From Octopus sinensis (lineage: Eukaryota): 7,489 bases of DNA. Location of the stretch: the NCBI RefSeq assembly GCF_006345805.1, contig NW_021828824.1, forward strand, positions 1 through 7,489, given 5' to 3'. Shown in pieces: positions 1 through 7,489 of this stretch (its first letter is position 1; every line of letters begins with the position of its first letter). A program made the translations under genes and the position numbers. The notes under the pieces are model-generated. The model was given only the letters and a program-made list of their open reading frames with translations, was not told the DNA's origin and did not search any database.

Positions 1-882
1 GTTGTCATACAAGGGGGTATTGTAACATATTCCCACCACTGTATGACAATATGTTGTATAACAAGAGACGGCAACAGAAATGATGTTCGTTGCTCATCTT
101 CTGTCACTGATTTTACCAGAATCAGTGAAGACACAGTCCTGGCCACCCTCCCATTTCGAAAGATGATTCTTATTATCAACCCTTTAAGTTTGAGAATCAA
201 AAGAATTCAGCTAGGATTAATCTTGGTTTCTTATTTGGAACATTCTACGCTTATAGGTGTAGAAATGTTTGGTCGGACCATATACGTCATTGACTGGGAA
301 GAGAATAGAATAAAATACGAATTCATAACCAAAGAAACCCCTTCAGATATTGCTGTAGGAGCACAAAATAAACTTTTAGTATCCTTTTCCAATATTAACA
401 GGGTTACCTGTTACAATGTGGATGGTCAGCAGGTATTTGAGGTGGATACCAATTCCCTGGACATTCCAAGCCACATCTCTGTGTACCAAAACCATTTTTA
501 TGTCCTTCAGGGACATATTATTTATCGGATATCAGGTACAGGTGCTGTGACAACAAGAGAAATTGGCATGAAATGCCGCCATATTTCTGTTGGCAAAGAA
601 AACATTTTTGTAACCGATTATTTTGATGTCCTTCATATCATTGGAACAAATGAAGACTTTTGGCCCAGGCAGTCATATAACCACCAGCTATGGACCCCAA
701 AATTGAACAACTATATTTATATTGAGGATTGCTACAATGTTACTAATATTCTACCTATGTCTACATCTTCTATATTAATATTCTACAGGAATAATAAAGC
801 TATATTATTCACTGAGACTGGAGAAATAATTAACCAAAATAATTCAACTTCCCTGAGATTCCTTCTTGCTTTTGTAGAATAA
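1..882 (+). CDS. 5' fragment of a tandem NHL-like beta-propeller protein (unit A and start of unit B); 5'-truncated by the window
   Basis: Frame +1 has no stop from base 1 (VVIQGGIVTYSHHC) to TAA 880-882, so ATG 43 need not be the start. It contains NHL-like blades PSDIAVGAQNKLLVSFSNINRVTCYNVDGQ, PSHISVYQNHFYV and ISVGKENIFVTD. VTDFTRISEDTVLATLPFRKMILII aligns without gaps to ATDICRWDSNHIGVTLPLQKQLRVI in the downstream ORF. Confidence 0.75.
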   Translation, partial: VVIQGGIVTYSHHCMTICCITRDGNRNDVRCSSSVTDFTRISEDTVLATLPFRKMILIINPLSLRIKRIQLGLILVSYLEHSTLIGVEMFGRTIYVIDWEENRIKYEFITKETPSDIAVGAQNKLLVSFSNINRVTCYNVDGQQVFEVDTNSLDIPSHISVYQNHFYVLQGHIIYRISGTGAVTTREIGMKCRHISVGKENIFVTDYFDVLHIIGTNEDFWPRQSYNHQLWTPKLNNYIYIEDCYNVTNILPMSTSSILIFYRNNKAILFTETGEIINQNNSTSLRFLLAFVE

Positions 883-950
883 ATTCTAAAGGATTTCTGG
901 TGTTTTACCATGAAAACAAAGAATTTCAGTGTATCACATGCCCTGGCTAA
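843..950 (+). other. Frame +3 coding bridge between the two annotated ORFs (frameshifted segment of the same gene)
   Basis: Bases 843-947 translate FNFPEIPSCFCRINSKGFLVFYHENKEFQCITCPG, then TAA 948-950. The first 31 aa align without gaps to unit C LSLPSTATDICRWDSNHIGVTLPLQKQLRVI, sharing P, C, R, S, V, K and I plus conservative hydrophobic positions. Confidence 0.75.
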
Positions 951-3900
951 TGAAAGGCCCTTTAATGAAAGTCCATACTGATTACATTGAACTATGTCAT
1001 GTTGTATCAAATAAGTGTTTAGCTCTAACCACAAGTGGAAACAAAAGCGAGGTCCATATCCTATTGATCCACGAAGATAAAGTTGACATTGCAGAAAGAA
1101 TTTCTCTGAGACATCATAATGTCAGCATTGCTGCAACTCCAATTAATTTTGTAGTCGTAGATGGAAACGAAAATAAAATGGTATTTTATTCCACATGTGG
1201 TGAAGAACTTTTTCAAAAATACCTTCCATTCTATGGCCACCCTCATCACATTTACTCTGATAATGTTTATTTCTATGTCCTCTTCAGGAGACACTCTATT
1301 CTCAGATGTTACGATCTATATGGACAAATGAAATGGCAGTGGGAACTGCCTTTCCCTGTTCACCCTCACATTGCTGTTTTCCAAGGAACTCTTTATGTCC
1401 CGGACACTCAACTCAACAGGGTTCTTCTTTACAAGTATCAAGACCGGTCGTCTGGCTGTCTTTTACCCATTAAAAATCCTTATATCAGAAATCTAAATCT
1501 ACGACTCAAAGAAAAGGAGAATGACCAAAAACTTGTCATTGGCGAAATATGTAATCTGTCCAATGGACAGTTGGTGGTGTCTGACATCAACCATGATTGC
1601 TTGTTGTACATTTCTGAGGAAGGAGACATTGTGTCCAGATTATCTCTGCCGTCTACAGCCACAGATATATGTCGATGGGATTCTAATCATATAGGGGTCA
1701 CATTACCCCTACAGAAACAATTAAGGGTCATCGGAAACCTATCAAAGAGAGTGAGAAGTGTATCATTAAGGCAGCCTTATGTACGGGTGTGTAAGATGGG
1801 TGAATGTGAAATTGTTTGTTATTGTGATAAACCATCACATTTAGACATTTTAGCCATCAATTATTATAATCAAGTCGAAGTAATTAAGACAATTAATATC
1901 CCTGTGTTTGTGAAATCATTATCAGTAGACAAGGAAACAGAAAAGCTATTAATTGTTACTAGGGAAAAAGCTTTTCAGTACAACACTAGAATAGGTGGTG
2001 GTGGTCATGGCAGTGCACGTCGTCAGAGTGGTGGAAGTGATGGTAGTATTAGTAGTGGTGATGGTAGTATTAGTAGTAGAGATGGTAGTATTAGTAGTAA
2101 TGATGGTAGTATTAGTAGTAGAGATGGTAGTATTAAGTCTAAAATAAAAGCTTTCTTCACGCTCTTTTGTTGTGGTGGTCATCGTCGTCCTCTTCCTGGT
2201 GATGGTCATCATCGTCCTCTTCGTGGTGGTGGTCATCATCGTCGTCGTCTTCATGGTGGTAAAACTAGATATCGTTATGTTAGTAAAACTAAGATGGTCC
2301 CCAGTGTTTTAATGTCCCAAGTGAAACGTCCCCTCAGTCTCCAAGGTGGATCTATTGACCAAATGTCTGTTTATCTGATAGACAGAAGCCGTATGTTTGC
2401 CATAAACGATCAGAATTTGTTGGTTAATGATCTCGTTACTAATAATCAACTTAATTATTATATCGACCTGGTGGATGTATTTTCCAGACACATTTCTCTC
2501 AGTGAAATGTTGTCTTCCACTTTATATCTACAGGACCTGACAGTTTCTGATAAAGCCAGACATATTCCTCTCCCTAAACATTTGGGAGACAAAGAACCAG
2601 CGGAGATTGGTCGTTTGGTTCTTACTGAAAATAATCTGATCGCAGGATGGGACTGGGAGAATGGAAACATTAAGATATTCACATTGGATGGTCAGCTTTT
2701 GGATTCAATCAAAGTGAATGTTTATTATTATATTAAAATGTGTCGATGGCAGTCAAACACACTGGTCATTACAAACTGGGATCGTTTTAATAAATCCCAA
2801 CTGTGGACATTAAAAGTGGAATTTCCATTGTCGTTGGTAATTTACCAAACGAGAAATAATTATAAATGTGTGGCTTCTTTATCAAATAATCAACTGGTTT
2901 TGAGTGAAGAGAGAGATGGAAGACATTTGCATTTTGTTGATATTGATGAAATACATTCGAGTGTGAAGGAAATAAAAAAAATAGACATACCTGAATCATT
3001 AATATTGAGAGACGAAGATGGAGATTATTTTGGTACAATCCATGATATTAAAGTTACTGATGAAGATGTCATCATTGTCTTCAACTGGAGATTCATCATT
3101 TTCTTCAACAGTGGTGGTCAATATTTACATTCAGTCAGACACTACATGGATTATTTTAGTGTTGAAGACAGGATGACAATTGATGACAGTTTTTTGTACA
3201 TTTATGGTGACTGGGAGAAATGTTTTAGTTCATCTGGATATCGAAACATTTTGTGTTTGACCCAGAATGGGGAATACAAGAGAATATTTTTAAATGAAAG
3301 AATTTATAAAGATGAAGTAGAATTCTCCAGTATAGACTGTAAAGGACCAAGGTTTGTTGGAAGCCTCTGGGGGAATGAATTGTATGTTGAAGGGTTGTTT
3401 ATGGTGAATCGAGACAGCTTCCCGGTTGCTCGTTTACAAACAGACGAATGTCCTGTTCAAGTAAAAGATTTTGATGTCTCTGAGGAAGGAAAGACAGTTG
3501 TGTGTGAAAAAGCCAATAATGGAAATGTTAAAATATTCGATGAAGACGGCCAGTTGCTACGTCACAGAAATGTTGCAAGTTTAGTTGGTGGTGTGTGTTT
3601 TACACAAGAATCACACATAATGGCCACGGTTCCTAAAAGGAAAGAAATATTTCAACTGAATGGAGAAGATTTGCAGACATCTCAAGTTTGGTCGAGTCTC
3701 ATCCCTTATGGTGTAATATGGAGAAAAGTGGCGGGTATTTACTGGTGTGTACATAATGAATTGATTGAATGTCATTGCATAAAGATTGATGGGGACCAAG
3801 TGAACATTCTGGAATCTGTGTCGTCATTAAATCTTGATTCTGGTCTTCGTTTCCCTTCCATTACATCTGAAACGAACAAGGAAATATTCAGTAAGGAATT

Positions 3901-5077
3901 AATTAATAAATTGGAATACAGAGGAGGAGATGGAGGAGGAAGAAGAAGAGGTAAATCAGGTGAAATAATTGGTAAAGGTAGATTAAAGGTGAGATGTGGT
4001 AATTACATAGCGGAGATTAATAATTCAGGAATTGATGAAATATCAGTGAGGAGACTTCCATATAGGACAGCAATGGTCCCTTTTTCCATTCCTGCATTCG
4101 AGGAACCTCTTGATTATGATTTCAGGGACATTAGGGACCGGAACAGTAAACTAATTAAGTTAGATGAGAATGTGAGTGTGTTGATGTTTCGAGAAAGTGT
4201 CACATTAATCAGAACAACAACAACAACAGTGGACATACTTCAACATGAACAACAACAACGACCACCACTGGACATATGTCGGTGGACAGAGGAATGTTTC
4301 ATTGTCGCCTTTGGGAGAGAAATGAGGGTCTTCAACAGGGATCTCCGTCGTTTAAAAACCATCAGAACTGAGAAATACTACAACAGGATTTATAAATACA
4401 ACGACAATCAACTCGTGTGTGGTGGTCATTATATTAGAGACATAACTCAAGAAGAGAGACACAAGAAATACAGAACAACATGGGAGAACAACAAGGATTA
4501 CTATTTTTGCAAAGACCCCAAAATCTTTGACCCTTATTATGTGGATGTGGTTGATTTTGAAGATGGGAAATGTAAAGATGAAGTGTGTCGTGGGAAGATG
4601 AGGAGATGGGGAAGGTTGGAGGGAGATGAAGGGGTGTTGGATGGTGTGGGAGTCACATCTTTTGGTGATGTTGTTGTTGTGAGGAGGAAGATGAAGAAGG
4701 AGTTTGGAATTTGGGGAGTTTATTGTTTTGTGGAATGGTTCAGGGAAAAGTCTTTGGTGAGGAGGATAAGAATAAAAGAAATATTTATTGGTCTGGAATG
4801 TTATATTCCAAGACCTCGTCTGACCATAATTGGTGAATGTGTTTATATAACAGATACAATAAACAATATTTACGAAATACCTGGACATATTGAAGAGGAA
4901 ACATCTGAAGATGATGAAATCCTGGGATTAAAATATTATCCAAAATATTTACTCCTCAGAGGGGGTGATAATGAAGTCTTGGAAGTTCTTGGTTTGGATG
5001 TTTCAGACAATTCTTTGATGGTTTTTGGAATTATTCCTGGACGTCAACCTTTTGCTTTCTTTTATTTTGACAAATAA
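929..5077 (+). CDS. Large intronless multi-beta-propeller (NHL-like/TolB-like six-bladed) repeat protein, units B-F; resembles the C-terminal domain of mollusc TRIM/B-box-like proteins
   Basis: 1382-codon open frame. Recurrent unit-start motif: IGEICNLSNGQLVVSDINHDCLLYISEEGDIVSRLSLPSTATDICRW (1538), IGRLVLTENNLIAGWDWENGNIKIFTLDGQLL...MCRW (2606), VKDFDVSEEGKTVVCEKANNGNVKIFDEDGQLL...GVCF (3461) and ...PLDICRWTEECFIVAF (4271). Alternating hydrophobic beta-strand pattern throughout. GTG 929 is probably not a true start because homology continues upstream in other frames. Confidence 0.85.
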   Translation: MYHMPWLMKGPLMKVHTDYIELCHVVSNKCLALTTSGNKSEVHILLIHEDKVDIAERISLRHHNVSIAATPINFVVVDGNENKMVFYSTCGEELFQKYLPFYGHPHHIYSDNVYFYVLFRRHSILRCYDLYGQMKWQWELPFPVHPHIAVFQGTLYVPDTQLNRVLLYKYQDRSSGCLLPIKNPYIRNLNLRLKEKENDQKLVIGEICNLSNGQLVVSDINHDCLLYISEEGDIVSRLSLPSTATDICRWDSNHIGVTLPLQKQLRVIGNLSKRVRSVSLRQPYVRVCKMGECEIVCYCDKPSHLDILAINYYNQVEVIKTINIPVFVKSLSVDKETEKLLIVTREKAFQYNTRIGGGGHGSARRQSGGSDGSISSGDGSISSRDGSISSNDGSISSRDGSIKSKIKAFFTLFCCGGHRRPLPGDGHHRPLRGGGHHRRRLHGGKTRYRYVSKTKMVPSVLMSQVKRPLSLQGGSIDQMSVYLIDRSRMFAINDQNLLVNDLVTNNQLNYYIDLVDVFSRHISLSEMLSSTLYLQDLTVSDKARHIPLPKHLGDKEPAEIGRLVLTENNLIAGWDWENGNIKIFTLDGQLLDSIKVNVYYYIKMCRWQSNTLVITNWDRFNKSQLWTLKVEFPLSLVIYQTRNNYKCVASLSNNQLVLSEERDGRHLHFVDIDEIHSSVKEIKKIDIPESLILRDEDGDYFGTIHDIKVTDEDVIIVFNWRFIIFFNSGGQYLHSVRHYMDYFSVEDRMTIDDSFLYIYGDWEKCFSSSGYRNILCLTQNGEYKRIFLNERIYKDEVEFSSIDCKGPRFVGSLWGNELYVEGLFMVNRDSFPVARLQTDECPVQVKDFDVSEEGKTVVCEKANNGNVKIFDEDGQLLRHRNVASLVGGVCFTQESHIMATVPKRKEIFQLNGEDLQTSQVWSSLIPYGVIWRKVAGIYWCVHNELIECHCIKIDGDQVNILESVSSLNLDSGLRFPSITSETNKEIFSKELINKLEYRGGDGGGRRRGKSGEIIGKGRLKVRCGNYIAEINNSGIDEISVRRLPYRTAMVPFSIPAFEEPLDYDFRDIRDRNSKLIKLDENVSVLMFRESVTLIRTTTTTVDILQHEQQQRPPLDICRWTEECFIVAFGREMRVFNRDLRRLKTIRTEKYYNRIYKYNDNQLVCGGHYIRDITQEERHKKYRTTWENNKDYYFCKDPKIFDPYYVDVVDFEDGKCKDEVCRGKMRRWGRLEGDEGVLDGVGVTSFGDVVVVRRKMKKEFGIWGVYCFVEWFREKSLVRRIRIKEIFIGLECYIPRPRLTIIGECVYITDTINNIYEIPGHIEEETSEDDEILGLKYYPKYLLLRGGDNEVLEVLGLDVSDNSLMVFGIIPGRQPFAFFYFDK
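2039..2134 (+). repeat. Coding 21-bp minisatellite, ~4.6 copies, encoding (DGSISS[G/R/N/R])n
   Basis: gatggtagtattagtagtNNN starts at 2039, 2060, 2081 and 2102, with a partial copy at 2123. The 18-nt core is identical in the four full copies. Confidence 0.95.
2174..2260 (+). repeat. Coding ~27-bp repeat, 3 copies, encoding G[G/D]GH[H/R]R[P/R]L
   Basis: ggtggtcatcgtcgtcctcttcctggt / gatggtcatcatcgtcctcttcgtggt / ggtggtcatcatcgtcgtcgtcttcatggt. Every codon ends in T. Confidence 0.85.
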
Positions 5078-5078
5078 A
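5073..5078 (+). promoter_or_regulatory. Candidate polyadenylation signal AATAAA overlapping the stop codon (variant ATTAAA at 5092-5097)
   Basis: GAC AAA TAA A gives AATAAA at 5073-5078, followed by a T/GT-rich tract at 5104-5136. Such hexamers are common by chance in AT-rich DNA. Confidence 0.3.
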
Positions 5079-5103
5079 TATTTCCAGAAATATTAAACTT
5101 CAA

Positions 5104-5136
5104 TCTTCTTCTTCTTCTTATTGTTCTTGTTGTTGT
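5104..5136. repeat. (CTT)n/(GTT)n short compound microsatellite
   Basis: tcttcttcttcttcttattgttcttgttgttg. Confidence 0.8.
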
Positions 5137-5139
5137 AAA

Positions 5140-5177
5140 TGGCTTCGCCCGGGAATCGAACCTGCATCGCATTCTAC
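5140..5177 (-). other. Decayed tRNA-like fragment (tRNA pseudogene or tRNA-derived SINE head remnant)
   Basis: The minus strand reads GTAGAATGC-GATGCA-GGTTCGATTCCCGG-GCGAAGCCA. It has a perfect Pol III B-box/T-loop GGTTCGATTCC (plus strand 5152-5162) and a D-arm-like GTAGAATGC, but no anticodon arm and no 5' acceptor strand. Confidence 0.5.
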
Positions 5178-5205
5178 ACACTTATTGTTGTAACATTCCT
5201 CAACA

Positions 5206-5384
5206 CTCTCTCTTTGTGTGTGTGTGTATATTTATATACAGTATATATACATGTGTTTATATATATATACACACATATTTAGGAATGTATGTATAGAAAT
5301 AAGGCTATAAATATGTATGTTTGTGTGTGTGTGTATATACGCATGTATATATATATATATATATATATGCTTGCATGTATGTAT
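5206..5384. repeat. Compound (TG)n/(TA)n/(TATG)n microsatellite
   Basis: Runs such as tgtgtgtgtgtg, tatatatatatatatatatat and atgtatgtat. Confidence 0.9.
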
Positions 5385-5448
5385 AGGAATGTCTGGTCCG
5401 AAAGCAGAGACTTTCATAATCATTGATTCTCCATTAAAAGGCAGACGA

Positions 5449-5537
5449 CCACCGCCGCCGTCTCCGTCGTCGTCGTCGTCGTCGTCGCCGTCGTGGTGGT
5501 CGTCGTCGTCTCCGCCGTCGTGGTCGTGGTCGTCATC

Positions 5538-5569
<32 letters not shown>

Positions 5570-5864
5570 CGTCGTCGTCATCATCACCATCATCGTCATC
5601 ATCATCATCATCGTCGTCATCATCATCATCATCGTCATCATCGTCGTCGTCGTCATCATCATCACCATCATCGTCATCATCATTATCATCGTCGTCGTCA
5701 TCATCATCGTCATCATCGTCATCATCATCATCAGCATCGTCGTCGTCATCATCATCATAATGATCATCATATCGTCGTCATCATCATCATCATCACCATC
5801 ATCATCATCGTCATAATCACCATCATCATCATCATCGTCGTCATCATCATCATCGTCGTCATCA
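5449..5864. repeat. ~415-bp compound trinucleotide microsatellite (CCG/TCG/TGG grading into TCA/TCG)
   Basis: Near-continuous 3-nt periodicity. It explains the poly-Ser (5317..5760), poly-Ile/Val (5493..5816) and poly-Met/Thr (5420..5770) ORFs. Confidence 0.97.
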
Positions 5865-5865
5865 G

Positions 5866-6016
5866 CGTTGTGTGTGCGTGTGTGCAGTCTGCATCTGACA
5901 GTTTTTAACGTTTAATAAGAATAGATTGTTGTTGTTGTTGCAGTGACATTCCAACTGCACACACGCACAAACATTGCCTTTCGTCCTCGTAGGGTTGTTG
6001 TTGTTGTTGTTGGTGG
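5866..6016. repeat. Cluster of short (TG)n, (CA)n and (GTT)n microsatellites
   Basis: gttgtgtgtgcgtgtgtg (5867), ttgttgttgttgttg (5926), cacacacgcaca (5957) and gttgttgttgttgttgttggtgg (5994). Confidence 0.8.
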
Positions 6017-6386
6017 TTCATAAAAAAGAGAAGGACACTTTAAGAAGCATTCAGTAAAAGCTTTCCCATAGCTGGTCATTTTTCACGCTAGAAATAGAAA
6101 CCACTTTACTTTTCATATAAAATTTGAAGGACAGATAAGAAGCATTCATAAATAAATTGACCTGTATATGGTCTCATTTCATGCTAGAAAGAGCCACCTA
6201 AACCTTCACATTTTTGTCTCATCACATAAAAACCAAGGACAATTTCCAAAGCATCCATGTCAAATATTGTCCTATAGATGGCCTAACATCATGCTAGAAA
6301 TAACAGCCAAATACTCTGAAATTTGTATCGTTTTTCATAAAATAAGTGAAGGACACTTTAAGAAGCAACTCTAAAAATGTTGTCCT
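6017..6386 (+). repeat. Degenerate tandem repeat, ~3.5 copies of a 96-114 bp unit
   Basis: AAGGAC anchors at 6031, 6127, 6235 and 6349. GCTAGAAA anchors at 6087, 6183 and 6293, which is 56, 56 and 58 nt after each AAGGAC. Exact 20-mer gaaggacactttaagaagca at 6030 and 6348; tcatgctagaaa at 6179 and 6289. Confidence 0.8.
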
Positions 6387-6620
6387 GCGGCGGTTTAAGT
6401 GTAAAATATTATAAAAGTATGCATCTATGAGTTTTATGTGTTTAAAAAACATAGCAAAGACCTGTGTGTATATGTAGGTATATACATGTGTATAAAGGTA
6501 TTCATTTGAATGAAATTTGGTAGAAATAACTTTCAAACGATGTAGATTACGATTACAAAGAAATTTGTTGGCAAAATGTTTTGTAAGGTGTCGAGGGAGA
6601 AAGTGTGTGATTTAAGGGAG

Positions 6621-6641
6621 ATTTGGCTGTTGTTTCTAGCA
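6621..6641 (-). repeat. Inverted partial copy of the same repeat family
   Basis: The reverse complement tgctagaaacaacagccaaat matches 6292-6312 tgctagaaataacagccaaat at 20/21. Confidence 0.8.
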
Positions 6642-6987
6642 CACCACCCTCCTTGTCTTTTTTTTTTTTTCTCATTTTTTCCCTCAGAAACACATTTATG
6701 TTACAAAAAAATAAAAAGAATATTTAAAAAATCTCTGATTATTTTTAGCCCCACTTCCTGGCCCCCGATTCTTTCTCTTTATATAATTGTAAAATATTGG
6801 AGAGCCTGAGAAGATTCTTGCTGGGATTTATCCACAGGGATTTAAATAAGAGCTTTGTAAAAGAGGATTTCTTTTGAGAGCATCCTTTTCTCTTAGAAAA
6901 GTGGAAGTTTCATTAAAAATATCCATTTTCCTGGAAGTTATGAGGAAACAAAGTCGATGGGGTGTTCATCTGTAGTTATGCCAAAGG

Positions 6988-7310
6988 ATATATATATATA
7001 TATAACTGTAGAAATGTAGGTGTGTATATATATATTATATGTATGTGTGTTTGTGTATACATTTATTCATGTATATGTACAAGTTTAAAAAAGAAATATC
7101 AAAAGATGTTGGAATATTTGAGGTATTGGATAATTTCCGACTCTATTGTATAGGATTGCCGATACATTTATATAGGAATATAAATATACATCATTACTAT
7201 ACCCACAGGAAAGCAGAATATTATATATACATGCATATTCATATATAAACTCAAATATATATACATATAATTATACATTATTATACGTAGACTTCTTGCA
7301 CACACATAGA
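6988..7310. repeat. AT-rich low-complexity region with (TA)n/(TG)n/(CA)n microsatellites
   Basis: atatatatatatatata (6988), gtgtgtatatatatattatatgtatgtgtg, and repeated tatatacat/atatata tracts up to cacacacata. Confidence 0.85.
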
Positions 7311-7374
7311 AAAGAACGGGTAAATCCATCTGTGACAACCCATGCTTAAGGTGTCTGGATATTTCGGTCTGGTA

Positions 7375-7488
7375 TCATACAAACTGCCCAGTCTGGAGTC
7401 TCTCTATAACTTCTGCCGCTTCCCGTTCAATTGTTTCTATTTGTCGCTTCAACGCTAATTTGAATGACAAAAACGCGGAGAAAAAGGC
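7375..7488 (-). CDS. Possible exon of a convergent neighbouring gene (coiled-coil-like peptide); runs off the window end
   Basis: The minus frame reads AFFSAFLSFKLALKRQIETIEREAAEVIERLQTGQFV*. Sequence complexity and GC rise abruptly after the TA tract. A pyrimidine tract plus AG acceptor (cctttttctccgcgtttttgtcattcaaattag|) would open an exon at 7454. The frame is short, so chance is possible. Confidence 0.3.
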   Translation of the reverse strand, partial: AFFSAFLSFKLALKRQIETIEREAAEVIERLQTGQFV

Positions 7489-7489
7489 G

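What the first reader, a model, noticed from the sequence alone, without database searches (positions are those of the whole stretch)
1..5077. Giant single-exon 'string of propellers': six tandem NHL-like beta-propeller units in one protein
Seen: the blade-2 anchor (D/C/K/G)-(F/I/M/V)-(T/C)-(R/F)-(I/W/T) recurs as DFTRI (109), CFCRI (867), DICRW (1664), KMCRW (2735), GVCFT (3590) and DICRW (4271). Spacings are ~760, 800, 1070 (~800 after removing a ~270-nt repeat insertion), 855 and 680 nt. Pro-containing linkers separate the units (e.g. CLLPIKNPYIRNL, RHIPLPKHLGDKEP, DSFPVARLQTDECP, MVPFSIPAFEEP). Known: NHL/TolB-like propellers usually occur once at the C-terminus of TRIM-NHL proteins (TRIM2/3/71, Brat), and molluscs carry expanded B-box plus propeller families often proposed as immune or recognition proteins. 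Inference: a hexameric-or-longer array of highly diverged propellers in one exon may be a lineage-specific multivalent ligand/RNA sensor or scaffold built by intragenic duplication. It is likely annotated only as uncharacterised.
Basis: partly seen in the sequence, partly recalled or inferred. Interest (0 to 1): 0.72.

Follow-up and report, generated by a model that had tools for sequence, protein, structure and literature searches.

The report
Octopus six-propeller hypervariable protein family
The window holds one, probably broken, copy of an uncharacterised gene family found only in octopuses and argonauts; each protein strings six propeller-shaped domains together, and two of them are changing fast on one face, as binding surfaces of recognition or immune proteins do.

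Summary
All six anchor motifs and four linkers sit at the stated coordinates, and the anchor pattern occurs nowhere else (0.09 matches expected by chance).

Profile comparisons show the six units are homologous to each other. Units 3-6 are also homologous to the single C-terminal propeller of mollusc RING-B-box (TRIM-like) proteins. AlphaFold2 predicts all-beta four-strand blades, and Foldseek matches multi-propeller proteins.

The window copy carries two 1-nt deletions (nt 848/849 and 945/946), so it is a recent pseudogene or a mis-assembled copy. It has dozens of paralogues, many clustered on one 29-Mb Octopus vulgaris chromosome. These are about 1,650-1,900 aa long, three are confirmed single-exon, none has a significant Pfam match, and all are named "uncharacterised". 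Argonauta has the same six-unit layout. No other taxon gave a strong hit.

The new result is a mosaic of selection. Units 2-3 are under purifying selection (omega about 0.47). Unit 4 and distal unit 6 have omega 1.6-1.7. Every second loop of these two units has omega about 3.7 (p=1.6e-7 and 5.7e-6), which places the variable loops on one propeller face.

The NHL label holds only remotely, because Pfam NHL stays below its cut-off, and there is no RING or B-box upstream. The likely function, an intracellular recognition repertoire, is an inference.

The parts
1..654 (+). Unit 1 (frame 1), the first propeller-type module; anchor DFTRI at nt 109. The window starts at the first strand of unit 1. 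The roughly 190-aa N-terminal region of intact paralogues lies upstream of the window.
   Evidence: AlphaFold2 on paralogue P0045 predicts about 21 strands (5-6 blades) at residues 185-401 with pLDDT about 80. Pairwise omega is 0.16-0.51.
655..711 (+). Pro-containing linker DFWPRQSYNHQLWTPKLNN between units 1 and 2.
   Evidence: Predicted disordered (P0045 residues 408-423, pLDDT below 50); coordinates.
712..1456 (+). Unit 2, read in frames 1, then 3, then 2; anchor CFCRI at nt 867. It is interrupted by two 1-nt deletions.
   Evidence: AlphaFold2 predicts 24 strands (6 blades) at P0045 residues 424-665 with pLDDT about 82. Omega is 0.47.
848..849 (+). First frameshift (frame 1 to frame 3): a 1-nt deletion in a T run (TTT becomes TT) relative to intact paralogues.
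   Evidence: tblastn of P0001 against the window; DNA alignment with L004.
945..946 (+). Second frameshift (frame 3 to frame 2): a 1-nt deletion in the codon after ITCP.
1457..2557 (+). Unit 3; it opens with the linker CLLPIKNPYIRNL and has anchor DICRW at nt 1664.
   Evidence: hhalign against the TRIM-type propeller of P0081/P0090 gives probability 95% and E=3e-8. Omega is 0.46.
1994..2293 (+). Low-complexity coding insertion inside unit 3. It contains a 21-nt repeat (DGSISS, 4.8 copies) and a 27-nt repeat (GGHHRP, 3.2 copies). Its length varies between paralogues.
   Evidence: Tandem Repeats Finder, nt 2036-2260. Predicted disordered at P0045 residues 851-917. Coordinates.
2558..3412 (+). 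Unit 4, the first hypervariable module; linker RHIPLPKHLGDKEP and anchor KMCRW at nt 2735. About 5 blades are predicted.
   Evidence: AlphaFold2 predicts 20 strands. Omega is 1.57 with p(omega>1)=4e-4, and all 36 close pairs have omega of 1.0 or more. Alternate loops have omega 3.78 against 0.48. Four dN/dS methods agree.
3413..4072 (+). Unit 5, a short and almost invariant module; linker DSFPVARLQTDECP and anchor GVCFT at nt 3590. It has 3 confident blades plus 1 low-confidence blade.
   Evidence: hhalign against the TRIM-type propeller gives probability 91% and E=1e-6. Strand codons have omega 0.22.
3920..3982 (+). Gly/Arg-rich (RGG-like) stretch RGGDGGGRRRGKSGEIIGKGR in a loop of unit 5 that is predicted disordered.
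   Evidence: The stretch is conserved in the paralogues.
4073..5074 (+). Unit 6; linker MVPFSIPAFEEP and anchor DICRW at nt 4271. About 6 blades are predicted, and the distal half (about nt 4540-5020) is hypervariable.
   Evidence: AlphaFold2 predicts 25 strands. Distal unit 6 (U6b) has omega 1.71 with p=0.002. Alternate loops have omega 3.66, p=5.7e-6.
5075..5077 (+). Stop codon of the family ORF.
5078..7489 (.). 3' flank that was duplicated together with the gene. It includes a (CGT)n/(TCA)n microsatellite at nt 5465-5864.
   Evidence: 88-96% identical, in three blocks, to the flank of the P0001 locus (L001 15614-18040). Repeats.

Best explanation
WHAT IT IS (shown). The window is one copy of an octopod-specific, multi-copy gene family. 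Most of each coding sequence lies in one large exon. The proteins are about 1,650-1,900 aa long, with no signal peptide or transmembrane segment detected. Each has a roughly 190-aa N-terminal region followed by six tandem beta-propeller-type modules that arose by internal duplication. Modules 3-6 are demonstrably homologous to the single C-terminal propeller of mollusc RING-B-box (TRIM-like) proteins, so they are remote relatives of NHL propellers. The RING/B-box part is absent. The window copy has two 1-nt deletions in module 2. It is therefore a very recent pseudogene or a copy with assembly errors.

HOW THE FAMILY EVOLVES (shown). Modules 1-3 and 5 are conserved and are homogenised between paralogues. 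Module 4 and the distal half of module 6 are hypervariable, with an excess of amino-acid replacements. These replacements are concentrated in every second inter-strand loop, which means one face of the propeller.

HOW IT MOST LIKELY WORKS (inferred, about 35-40% likely). The family is a germline-encoded repertoire of intracellular recognition proteins. Modules 1-3 and 5 form a constant scaffold for partner or effector binding. Two variable propeller faces bind fast-evolving ligands, most plausibly pathogen-, virus- or transposon-derived protein or RNA.
For: Family membership and copy number:
- 59 Octopus proteins match at 38-92% identity; all are unnamed and carry no Pfam domain apart from chimeric gene models.
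- Copies on O. vulgaris OX597841.1 lie at 9.57, 9.80, 10.31, 10.43, 21.87-21.93, 21.99, 22.17, 22.66 and 22.83 Mb.
- P0001, P0002 and P0007 are single-exon genes.
- Argonauta hians proteins of 1,913 and 1,925 aa carry the N-terminal region and all six units in the same order.

Units and fold:
- hhalign between units gives E from 3e-7 to 8e-4.
- AlphaFold2 predicts all-beta four-strand meanders. The C-terminal half has pLDDT 70 and pTM 0.70; units 1-2 have pLDDT about 80.
- Foldseek matches tandem-propeller proteins (IFT-A, LRP2/LRP4, DDB1, Utp21) at E from 1e-21 to 1e-12.

Origin of the units:
- Units 3, 5, 4 and 6 match the whole propeller of P0081/P0090 (RING, two B-boxes, coiled coil, propeller) with hhalign probabilities of 95, 91, 80 and 68%.
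- Unit HMMs score 40.8, 37.4, 23.1 and 21.5 bits on the same P0081 segment.
- The bivalve RING-B-box protein P0079 is hit at E=1.3e-4 for the whole library. Its propeller matches the NHL region of teneurin at E=1e-6.

Selection, from tree-based counts on nine close paralogues:
- U2 omega 0.47, U3 0.46, U4 1.57 (p=4e-4), distal U6 1.71 (p=0.002).
- Pairwise NG86, LWL85, YN00 and ML estimates agree.
- In U4 the even-numbered loops have 190 non-synonymous against 11 synonymous changes (omega 3.78, p=1.6e-7). The odd-numbered loops have omega 0.48.
- The even-numbered loops of U6 have omega 3.66 (p=5.7e-6).

Localisation: no N-terminal signal-like or transmembrane-like hydrophobic segment was found in nine family members.

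Frameshifts.
Against: - Function is not tested. No expression, ligand or phenotype data exist, and no paper mentions the family.
- The window copy cannot encode the full protein as it stands. Its overall omega against P0001 is 0.97.
That claim rests on loop parity and on the NHL-like A-B-C-D register.
- The counting methods ignore recombination. Gene conversion is evident, so the p-values are approximate.
- Several of the nine paralogues used are themselves disrupted upstream.
- Absence from squids, cuttlefish and other taxa rests on predicted-protein databases, not on searches of their genomes.
- The N-terminal region gives no clue to an output or effector function.
Confidence: 0.6

Rival explanations
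1. The window feature is only a dead copy: a pseudogene in a decaying tandem or segmental repeat with no present function. On this view the apparent omega of about 1 or more reflects relaxed constraint.
For: - Two frameshifting deletions lie in unit 2.
- Overall omega against P0001 is 0.97.
- Many paralogue models are split or skip the same region.
- Fragments of further copies lie nearby.
- The window's ORF is absent from the protein collection.
Against: - This holds for the window copy at most, not for the family.
- ORFs of 1,650-1,900 aa stay open at 30-35% identity between Octopus and Argonauta.
- Units 1-3 have omega 0.2-0.5.
- Relaxed constraint gives omega near 1, not 3.7 in alternate loops next to 0.48 in the intervening loops.
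- The window has only 12-13 private changes, so any inactivation is very recent.
- The first deletion lies in a T run and could be an assembly error.
Confidence: 0.5
2. The protein is a conventional structural or assembly scaffold of the tandem WD40 type (as in IFT-A, EML, DDB1 or Utp21) with a conserved cellular role.
For: The top Foldseek matches are tandem WD40 propeller proteins at E from 1e-21 to 1e-12.
Against: - TM-scores are low (0.28 or less) and sequence identity is 7-11%, so the match reflects only the generic fold.
- No WD40 family reaches Pfam significance.
- The sequence-level relatives are TRIM-type propellers.
- The family is restricted to octopods, has dozens of copies, and shows positive selection, none of which fits a housekeeping scaffold.
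Confidence: 0.07
3. The family is a recognition family, but for reproduction (gamete or seminal proteins) or for neuronal or tissue self-identity rather than for defence.
For: Lineage-specific expansion together with positive selection on a binding surface is also typical of reproductive proteins. From general knowledge, octopus genomes also show large lineage-specific expansions of neuronal recognition genes such as protocadherins.
Against: - No signal peptide or transmembrane segment was found, so the protein is unlikely to act at the cell surface.
- No expression data are available to decide.
Confidence: 0.15
4. The ORF belongs to a selfish or mobile element, and its copy number reflects transposition.
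For: - There are many dispersed copies with conserved flanks.
- Reverse-transcriptase ORFs occur near relatives.
Against: - No transposase, integrase or reverse-transcriptase domain lies in or next to the ORF.
- The duplicated blocks differ in extent between copies, reaching 0.6-3 kb upstream and 1.3-4 kb downstream. They lack sharp common ends, as expected for segmental or tandem duplication.
- The copies cluster in two regions of one chromosome.
Confidence: 0.04

Closest known systems
TRIM-NHL proteins (Brat, TRIM71/LIN-41, TRIM2/3, TRIM32/Thin) and mollusc RING-B-box-propeller proteins (here P0079 and P0090)
   Same: - Each octopod unit is about the size of, and homologous to, the single C-terminal propeller of P0081/P0090 (hhalign probabilities of 68-95% for units 3-6).
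- The first blades keep an NHL-like "hhVxD..N..IxhF..dGxhh" pattern (seen directly in the sequence).
- The outgroup propellers in turn hit NHL domains of teneurin, Brat, Thin and TRIM71.
   Different: - There are six propellers in tandem instead of one.
- There is no RING, B-box or coiled coil.
- The Pfam NHL model is not reached.
- The family is multi-copy with hypervariable modules.
TRIM5alpha and fish finTRIM/bloodthirsty B30.2 families (from general knowledge)
   Same: Both are intracellular, lineage-specifically expanded and clustered, and both show positive selection concentrated in surface loops of the C-terminal recognition domain. This parallels units 4 and 6 here.
   Different: The recognition fold is a B30.2/SPRY beta-sandwich rather than a propeller. 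Those proteins keep the RING E3 module, and this family has none.
LDL-receptor family (LRP2, LRP4), which has tandem six-bladed YWTD propellers
   Same: Several six-blade-type propellers lie in one chain, and these proteins are among the top Foldseek matches for the N-terminal half.
   Different: LRPs are extracellular, with EGF and LDL-A modules between the propellers. There is no sequence similarity, and LRPs are conserved across metazoans and not hypervariable.
Tandem WD40 proteins (IFT-A subunits, DDB1, Utp21, EML, AIP1)
   Same: The fold-level match is multi-propeller and all-beta.
   Different: Those proteins have seven-bladed WD40 repeats, housekeeping roles and are mostly single-copy. 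No sequence-profile relation to them was found.

Membership tests
Octopod six-unit family (unnamed; e.g. O. vulgaris P0001, O. bimaculoides LOC106878473) | Colinear high-identity match over the whole ORF. | tested here: met
   The window is 87% identical to P0001 over 100% of its 1,382-aa ORF. It is 92-96% identical at the DNA level, including the 3' flank.
Octopod six-unit family | An intact reading frame running from the N-terminal region through units 1-6. | tested here: not met
   Two 1-nt deletions lie at nt 848/849 and 945/946. The N-terminal region lies outside the window.
NHL repeat / NHL propeller (Pfam PF01436) | A match to the NHL repeat model at or above the gathering score. | tested here: not met
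   The window scores E=3.9 and 8.1 bits. The best family member, P0065, scores 18.5 bits against a cut-off of 20. NHL is not among the families hit by the 30 members scanned.
NHL repeat / NHL propeller | Six four-stranded blades of about 40 aa forming a closed ring. | tested here: inconclusive
   AlphaFold2 strand counts give about 5-6, 6, 5, 5, 3-4 and 6 blades for units 1-6.
NHL repeat / NHL propeller | Detectable homology to bona fide NHL domains. | tested here: inconclusive
   - The link is only transitive. The units match P0081/P0090 and P0079.
- P0079 matches the teneurin NHL region at E=1e-6.
- P0081 matches Brat, Thin and TRIM71 at E 0.08-1.
- The direct family profile against PDB gives TRIM71 at E=0.47.
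TRIM / RBCC proteins | An N-terminal RING, B-box(es) and coiled coil. | tested here: not met
   Intact paralogues have no RING or B-box Pfam hit. Their N-terminus is predicted as disordered plus about 80 aa of low-confidence helices.
WD40 repeat proteins | WD40 sequence repeats (Pfam) forming seven-bladed propellers. | tested here: not met
   No WD40 model is significant. The only similarity is at fold level in Foldseek, with TM-scores of 0.28 or less.
Families under diversifying selection at a binding surface (a functional class, not a homology family) | Omega above 1 localised to surface loops, with purifying selection elsewhere. | tested here: met
   - U4 has omega 1.57 and distal U6 1.71, against 0.46-0.47 for U2 and U3.
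- Alternate loops have omega 3.78 and 3.66, against 0.48 and 1.03 for the intervening loops.
- Four methods agree.
- Recombination-aware codon models were not run.

The most novel reading that the evidence does not exclude
Octopods carry a previously undescribed class of germline-encoded intracellular receptors. Each has a constant array of TRIM-derived propellers bearing two hypervariable propeller faces (modules 4 and 6). The repertoire is diversified by duplication, module-wise gene conversion and positive selection, and it serves to recognise viruses, other pathogens or mobile elements. This would be a propeller-based counterpart of TRIM5/finTRIM or NLR repertoires.
Probability: 0.25. Interest if true: 0.85.

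Novelty: new variant of a known kind. Interest (0 to 1): 0.62.

Why it matters
Cephalopod immunity and cephalopod-specific genes are poorly understood. From general knowledge, these animals have no antibody-type adaptive immune system, and few candidate diversified receptors are known in them.

This family has three features that together mark it as a candidate recognition repertoire:
- It is large and lineage-restricted, with no significant match to any annotated domain family.
- It has an unusual architecture: six tandem propellers derived from the TRIM-type propeller, without the E3 ligase part.
- Positive selection is confined to one face of two specific propellers.

The finding also gives concrete targets. 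Experiments can focus on the loops of units 4 and 6. The pattern of conserved and variable modules is a clean example of gene conversion acting module by module alongside diversifying selection.

For the window itself the practical message is modest: it is one, probably defective, paralogue.

Tried and rejected
- Pfam scans of the window ORFs, six paralogues, 30 alignment members, and the Argonauta and divergent copies gave nothing significant. The most consistent weak hit was DUF4934, in 19 of 30 members with best E=0.0011.
- A PDB sequence search with the family profile gave nothing below E=0.2.
- Plain self-BLAST of the repaired protein showed no off-diagonal hits. Unit-against-unit BLAST gave only marginal hits. 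Profile methods were needed.
- The search for homologous proteins with the P0079 propeller returned only P0079 itself, so that search was wasted.
- Four literature searches, by LOC identifiers and by topic, found nothing on this family.
- The parsimony omega over all 11 paralogues was about 1 in U4 and U6. I traced this to the deeply diverged P0016/P0017 modules (dS 0.4-0.6). The analysis was therefore restricted to the nine close paralogues.
- Testing whether the window lineage evolves neutrally failed for lack of changes: it has only 12-13 private substitutions.
- The transposable-element reading was rejected because the duplicated blocks have no common ends.
- A secreted or membrane location was rejected on a hydrophobicity scan alone.
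- The third Foldseek job and the viral library were not used, because they could add nothing.

Full report
**1. What is in the window**

The + strand carries one long coding region that runs off the left edge and ends at the stop codon at nt 5075-5077. It is read in frame 1 (nt 1-848), frame 3 (nt 849-945) and frame 2 (nt 946-5074, within the 1,382-aa ORF at 929-5077).

Compared with intact relatives, the two frame changes are single-base deletions. One is at nt 848/849, in a T run. The other is at nt 945/946.

The remaining 2.4 kb is AT-rich non-coding sequence with a (CGT)n/(TCA)n microsatellite at nt 5465-5864. ORFs on the minus strand are short, or low-complexity mirror images of the + strand ORF, and have no support.

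**2. Checking the observation**

All six anchors and all four linkers are at the stated coordinates. The spacings are 758, 797, 1071, 855 and 681 nt.

Shuffling gives 0.09 matches on average. Because the pattern was chosen after the fact, I relied on independent tests.

- I built profiles of each unit from 18 full-length paralogues and compared them with hhalign. They align in register over 130-250 columns: U4-U6 E=3e-7, U3-U6 7e-7, U4-U5 9e-6, U3-U4 3e-5, U2-U4 3e-4 and U1-U2 8e-4. The N-terminal region matches no unit.
- Unit HMMs cross-hit other units in distant family members.
- The tandem repeats at nt 2036-2260, inside the low-complexity stretch at nt 1994-2293, are the repeat insertion that lengthens unit 3.

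**3. Fold**

I ran two AlphaFold2 jobs with family alignments.

- The C-terminal half (window nt 2558-5074, units 4-6) has mean pLDDT 70 and pTM 0.70, and is essentially all beta.
- The N-terminal half used the intact paralogue P0045. It has pLDDT about 80 for units 1 and 2 and about 60 for unit 3. The first 180 residues are disordered apart from a low-confidence 80-aa helical stretch.

The strands come in runs of four. The counts are about 21, 24, 19-20, 20, 12-16 and 25 for units 1-6, which corresponds to about 5-6, 6, 5, 5, 3-4 and 6 blades.

The "blade-2 anchor" description is therefore correct.

The linkers and the low-complexity insert are predicted disordered.

Foldseek against PDB returns only multi-propeller proteins: IFT-A, LRP2/LRP4, DDB1, Utp21 and axonemal WD40 proteins. 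E-values run from 1e-21 to 1e-12, but TM-scores are 0.28 or less and identity is 7-11%. This confirms the general fold and says nothing about the family.

Coordinates are not exposed, so I could not verify ring closure. Unit 5 is clearly a short unit.

**4. What family it is**

The ORF has 59 database relatives at E<=0.001. All are from Octopus vulgaris, O. sinensis or O. bimaculoides, all are "uncharacterized" or "hypothetical", and identities are 38-92%. They carry no Pfam domain except in obviously chimeric gene models.

Intact members are 1,650-1,900 aa long. P0001, P0002 and P0007 are single-exon genes. Others have a short upstream exon.

On O. vulgaris chromosome OX597841.1 (29.2 Mb) the copies fall in two regions, at about 9.6-10.4 Mb and 21.9-22.8 Mb. 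One of these holds a head-to-tail pair.

The window is 92-96% identical in DNA to the P0001 locus, both across the gene and across the full 2.4-kb 3' flank. The duplicated blocks differ in extent from copy to copy and have no common ends. This points to segmental or tandem duplication rather than transposition.

I then ran an exhaustive HMMER search of 1.84 billion representative proteins with an N-terminal-half profile. It found only 28 hits at E<=0.001.

- The strong hits are from Octopus, plus two Argonauta hians proteins of 1,913 and 1,925 aa.
- The Argonauta proteins contain the N-terminal region and all six units in order, at about 35% identity.

The architecture is therefore old within octopods. 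As far as predicted proteomes show, it is absent elsewhere.

**5. Where the units come from**

Two of the three weak outgroup hits are informative.

- P0079 comes from a freshwater mussel. It has a RING (weak match), a significant B-box and a C-terminal propeller. That propeller matches the NHL region of teneurin at E=1e-6.
- P0081 is the C-terminal part of a TRIM-type gene. An adjacent ORF encodes the RING. Its 66%-identical relative P0090 has a RING, two B-boxes, a coiled-coil-length spacer and the propeller.

Unit HMMs U3, U5, U4 and U6 score 40.8, 37.4, 23.1 and 21.5 bits on the same P0081 segment.

hhalign aligns whole units to the whole P0081/P0090 propeller: U3 95% (E=3e-8), U5 91%, U4 80% and U6 68%.

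The shared signature extends well beyond the five-residue anchor:
- window unit 3: ATDICRWDSNHIGVTLPLQKQLRVIGN
- P0081: IGGICSWSNNQIVVTMPVVRQLFFINH

One octopod unit therefore corresponds to one TRIM-type propeller.

The link to true NHL domains is only remote.

- P0081 hits Brat, Thin and TRIM71 at E 0.08-1.
- The family profile hits TRIM71 at E=0.47.
- The Pfam NHL model stays below its cut-off: 18.5 against 20 bits at best.

No RING or B-box is present in the octopod proteins.

**6. Selection: the main new result**

I extracted the coding DNA of ten O. vulgaris paralogues plus the window and counted synonymous and non-synonymous changes.

The window against P0001 gives omega 0.97 overall, but this average hides a mosaic.

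Among nine close paralogues, dS is similar in all modules (0.01-0.19). Tree-based counts give:

| Module | Omega | Test |
|---|---|---|
| U2 | 0.47 | p(omega<1)=0.003 |
| U3 | 0.46 | p(omega<1)=6e-7 |
| U4 | 1.57 | p(omega>1)=4e-4 |
| U5 | 0.67 | not significant |
| U6, proximal | 1.14 | not significant |
| U6, distal | 1.71 | p(omega>1)=0.002 |

- All 36 pairwise U4 comparisons have omega of 1.0 or more.
- NG86, LWL85, YN00 and ML estimates agree.
- Unit 1 has pairwise omega of 0.16-0.51.

I mapped the changes onto the AlphaFold2 secondary structure. Replacements cluster in discrete hot spots, and these alternate strictly with conserved loops.

- In U4, loops 2, 4, 6 and so on carry 190 non-synonymous against 11 synonymous changes (omega 3.78, p=1.6e-7).
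- In U4, loops 1, 3, 5 and so on have omega 0.48.
- In U6, the even-numbered loops have omega 3.66 (p=5.7e-6).

In a beta-meander, alternate loops lie on opposite faces. The variability is therefore on one face of each of these two propellers. With the A-B-C-D strand register suggested by the NHL-like motif, these are the B-C and D-A loops. By convention that is the "top" face, which binds ligands. This last assignment is an inference.

The subfamily of P0016 and P0017 is deeply diverged in U4 and U6 (dS 0.4-0.6) but almost identical in U2, U3 and U5 (dS 0.01-0.07). This shows module-wise gene conversion: the constant modules are homogenised and the variable ones are kept apart.

Caveats:
- These are counting methods.
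- Recombination violates the single-tree assumption.
- Some of the copies used are disrupted upstream.
- Neither relaxed constraint nor conversion from diverged donors can produce omega of about 3.7 next to 0.48.

**7. Interpretation**

*Shown:* the anatomy, the family, the origin of the units and the selection mosaic.

*Inferred:*
- The proteins are intracellular, because no signal or transmembrane segment was found.
- They act as a repertoire of recognition proteins, with a constant scaffold (units 1-3 and 5) and two variable binding faces (units 4 and 6).
- The nearest functional analogy is the TRIM5/finTRIM type of expanded, positively selected intracellular receptor, but with a propeller as the recognition module and without an E3 module.

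I put about 35-40% on a defence-type recognition role and about 15% on reproductive or other self-recognition roles. A housekeeping scaffold or a mobile-element origin gets little weight.

The window copy itself is either a very recent pseudogene or carries assembly errors. It has only 12-13 private substitutions, so the data cannot decide between the two.

**8. Novelty**

The proteins are in public databases but are unnamed, have no domain annotation, and do not appear in the literature I could search.

Propeller arrays and hypervariable receptor families are both known kinds of system. New here are the six-fold TRIM-type propeller array without the RING/B-box/coiled-coil part, its restriction to octopods, and the face-specific diversifying selection on two modules. 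I rate it a new variant of a known kind, with an interest score of 0.62.

The NHL label and the proposed function remain only partly supported.

Noticed in passing
window 1994-2293: A coding minisatellite lies inside unit 3, made of a 21-nt unit (DGSISS, 4.8 copies) and a 27-nt unit (GGHHRP, 3.2 copies). It is predicted disordered and differs in length and content between paralogues (compare P0001, P0008, P0012 and P0021).
   Followed up: partly
window 3920-3982: A Gly/Arg-rich, RGG-like stretch (RGGDGGGRRRGKSGEIIGKGR) sits in a disordered loop of the otherwise near-invariant unit 5. It is conserved across paralogues and could be an RNA- or protein-interaction motif.
   Followed up: no
window 3413-4072 (unit 5): The unit 5 core is almost invariant among paralogues even at synonymous sites (dS about 0.00-0.07, and 0-0.4 changes per codon). 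This suggests very frequent gene conversion or constraint at the nucleotide level.
   Followed up: partly
window 5078-7489; L001 15614-18040: The whole 3' flank, including the (CGT)n/(TCA)n microsatellite at nt 5465-5864, is co-duplicated with the gene at 88-96% identity. Duplication blocks differ in extent between copies.
   Followed up: yes
L006 1517-6915; gene models P0008, P0009 and P0010: Several paralogues are split, or have gene models that skip the same region (P0001 aa about 345-520, covering late unit 1 and early unit 2). The window's frameshifts lie in this same region. This could be a recurrent break point, or an isoform lacking this part.
   Followed up: partly
L004 and L005 (tandem pair P0016/P0017, OX597841.1 at 21.87-21.93 Mb): Divergence is a mosaic: dS is 0.4-0.6 in units 4 and 6 but 0.01-0.07 in units 2, 3 and 5 relative to the other subfamily. 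This indicates module-wise gene conversion or module exchange.
   Followed up: yes
L001 20137-22589: Fragments of another family copy (81-97% identical to window nt 1232-1702, 3245-3903 and 3973-4452) lie under a gene model that carries C2H2 zinc-finger hits. P0004 and P0006 likewise look like chimeric annotations fused to neighbouring genes.
   Followed up: no
L011 9438-11404 (ENA contig ERZ21867824:ctg93543l): The nearest non-octopod relative is a TRIM-like gene (RING, B-boxes, propeller) that appears split into two adjacent ORFs. It comes from an unidentified eukaryote and has a reverse-transcriptase ORF nearby. The source organism was not determined.
   Followed up: no
P0065, P0083 and P0084 (Octopus, on the 192-216-Mb chromosomes): A divergent six-unit paralogue, 30-32% identical to P0001, lies on a different, large chromosome and has members in three Octopus species. 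It may be the ancestral single-copy member, and it gives the best Pfam NHL score in the family (18.5 bits).
   Followed up: partly
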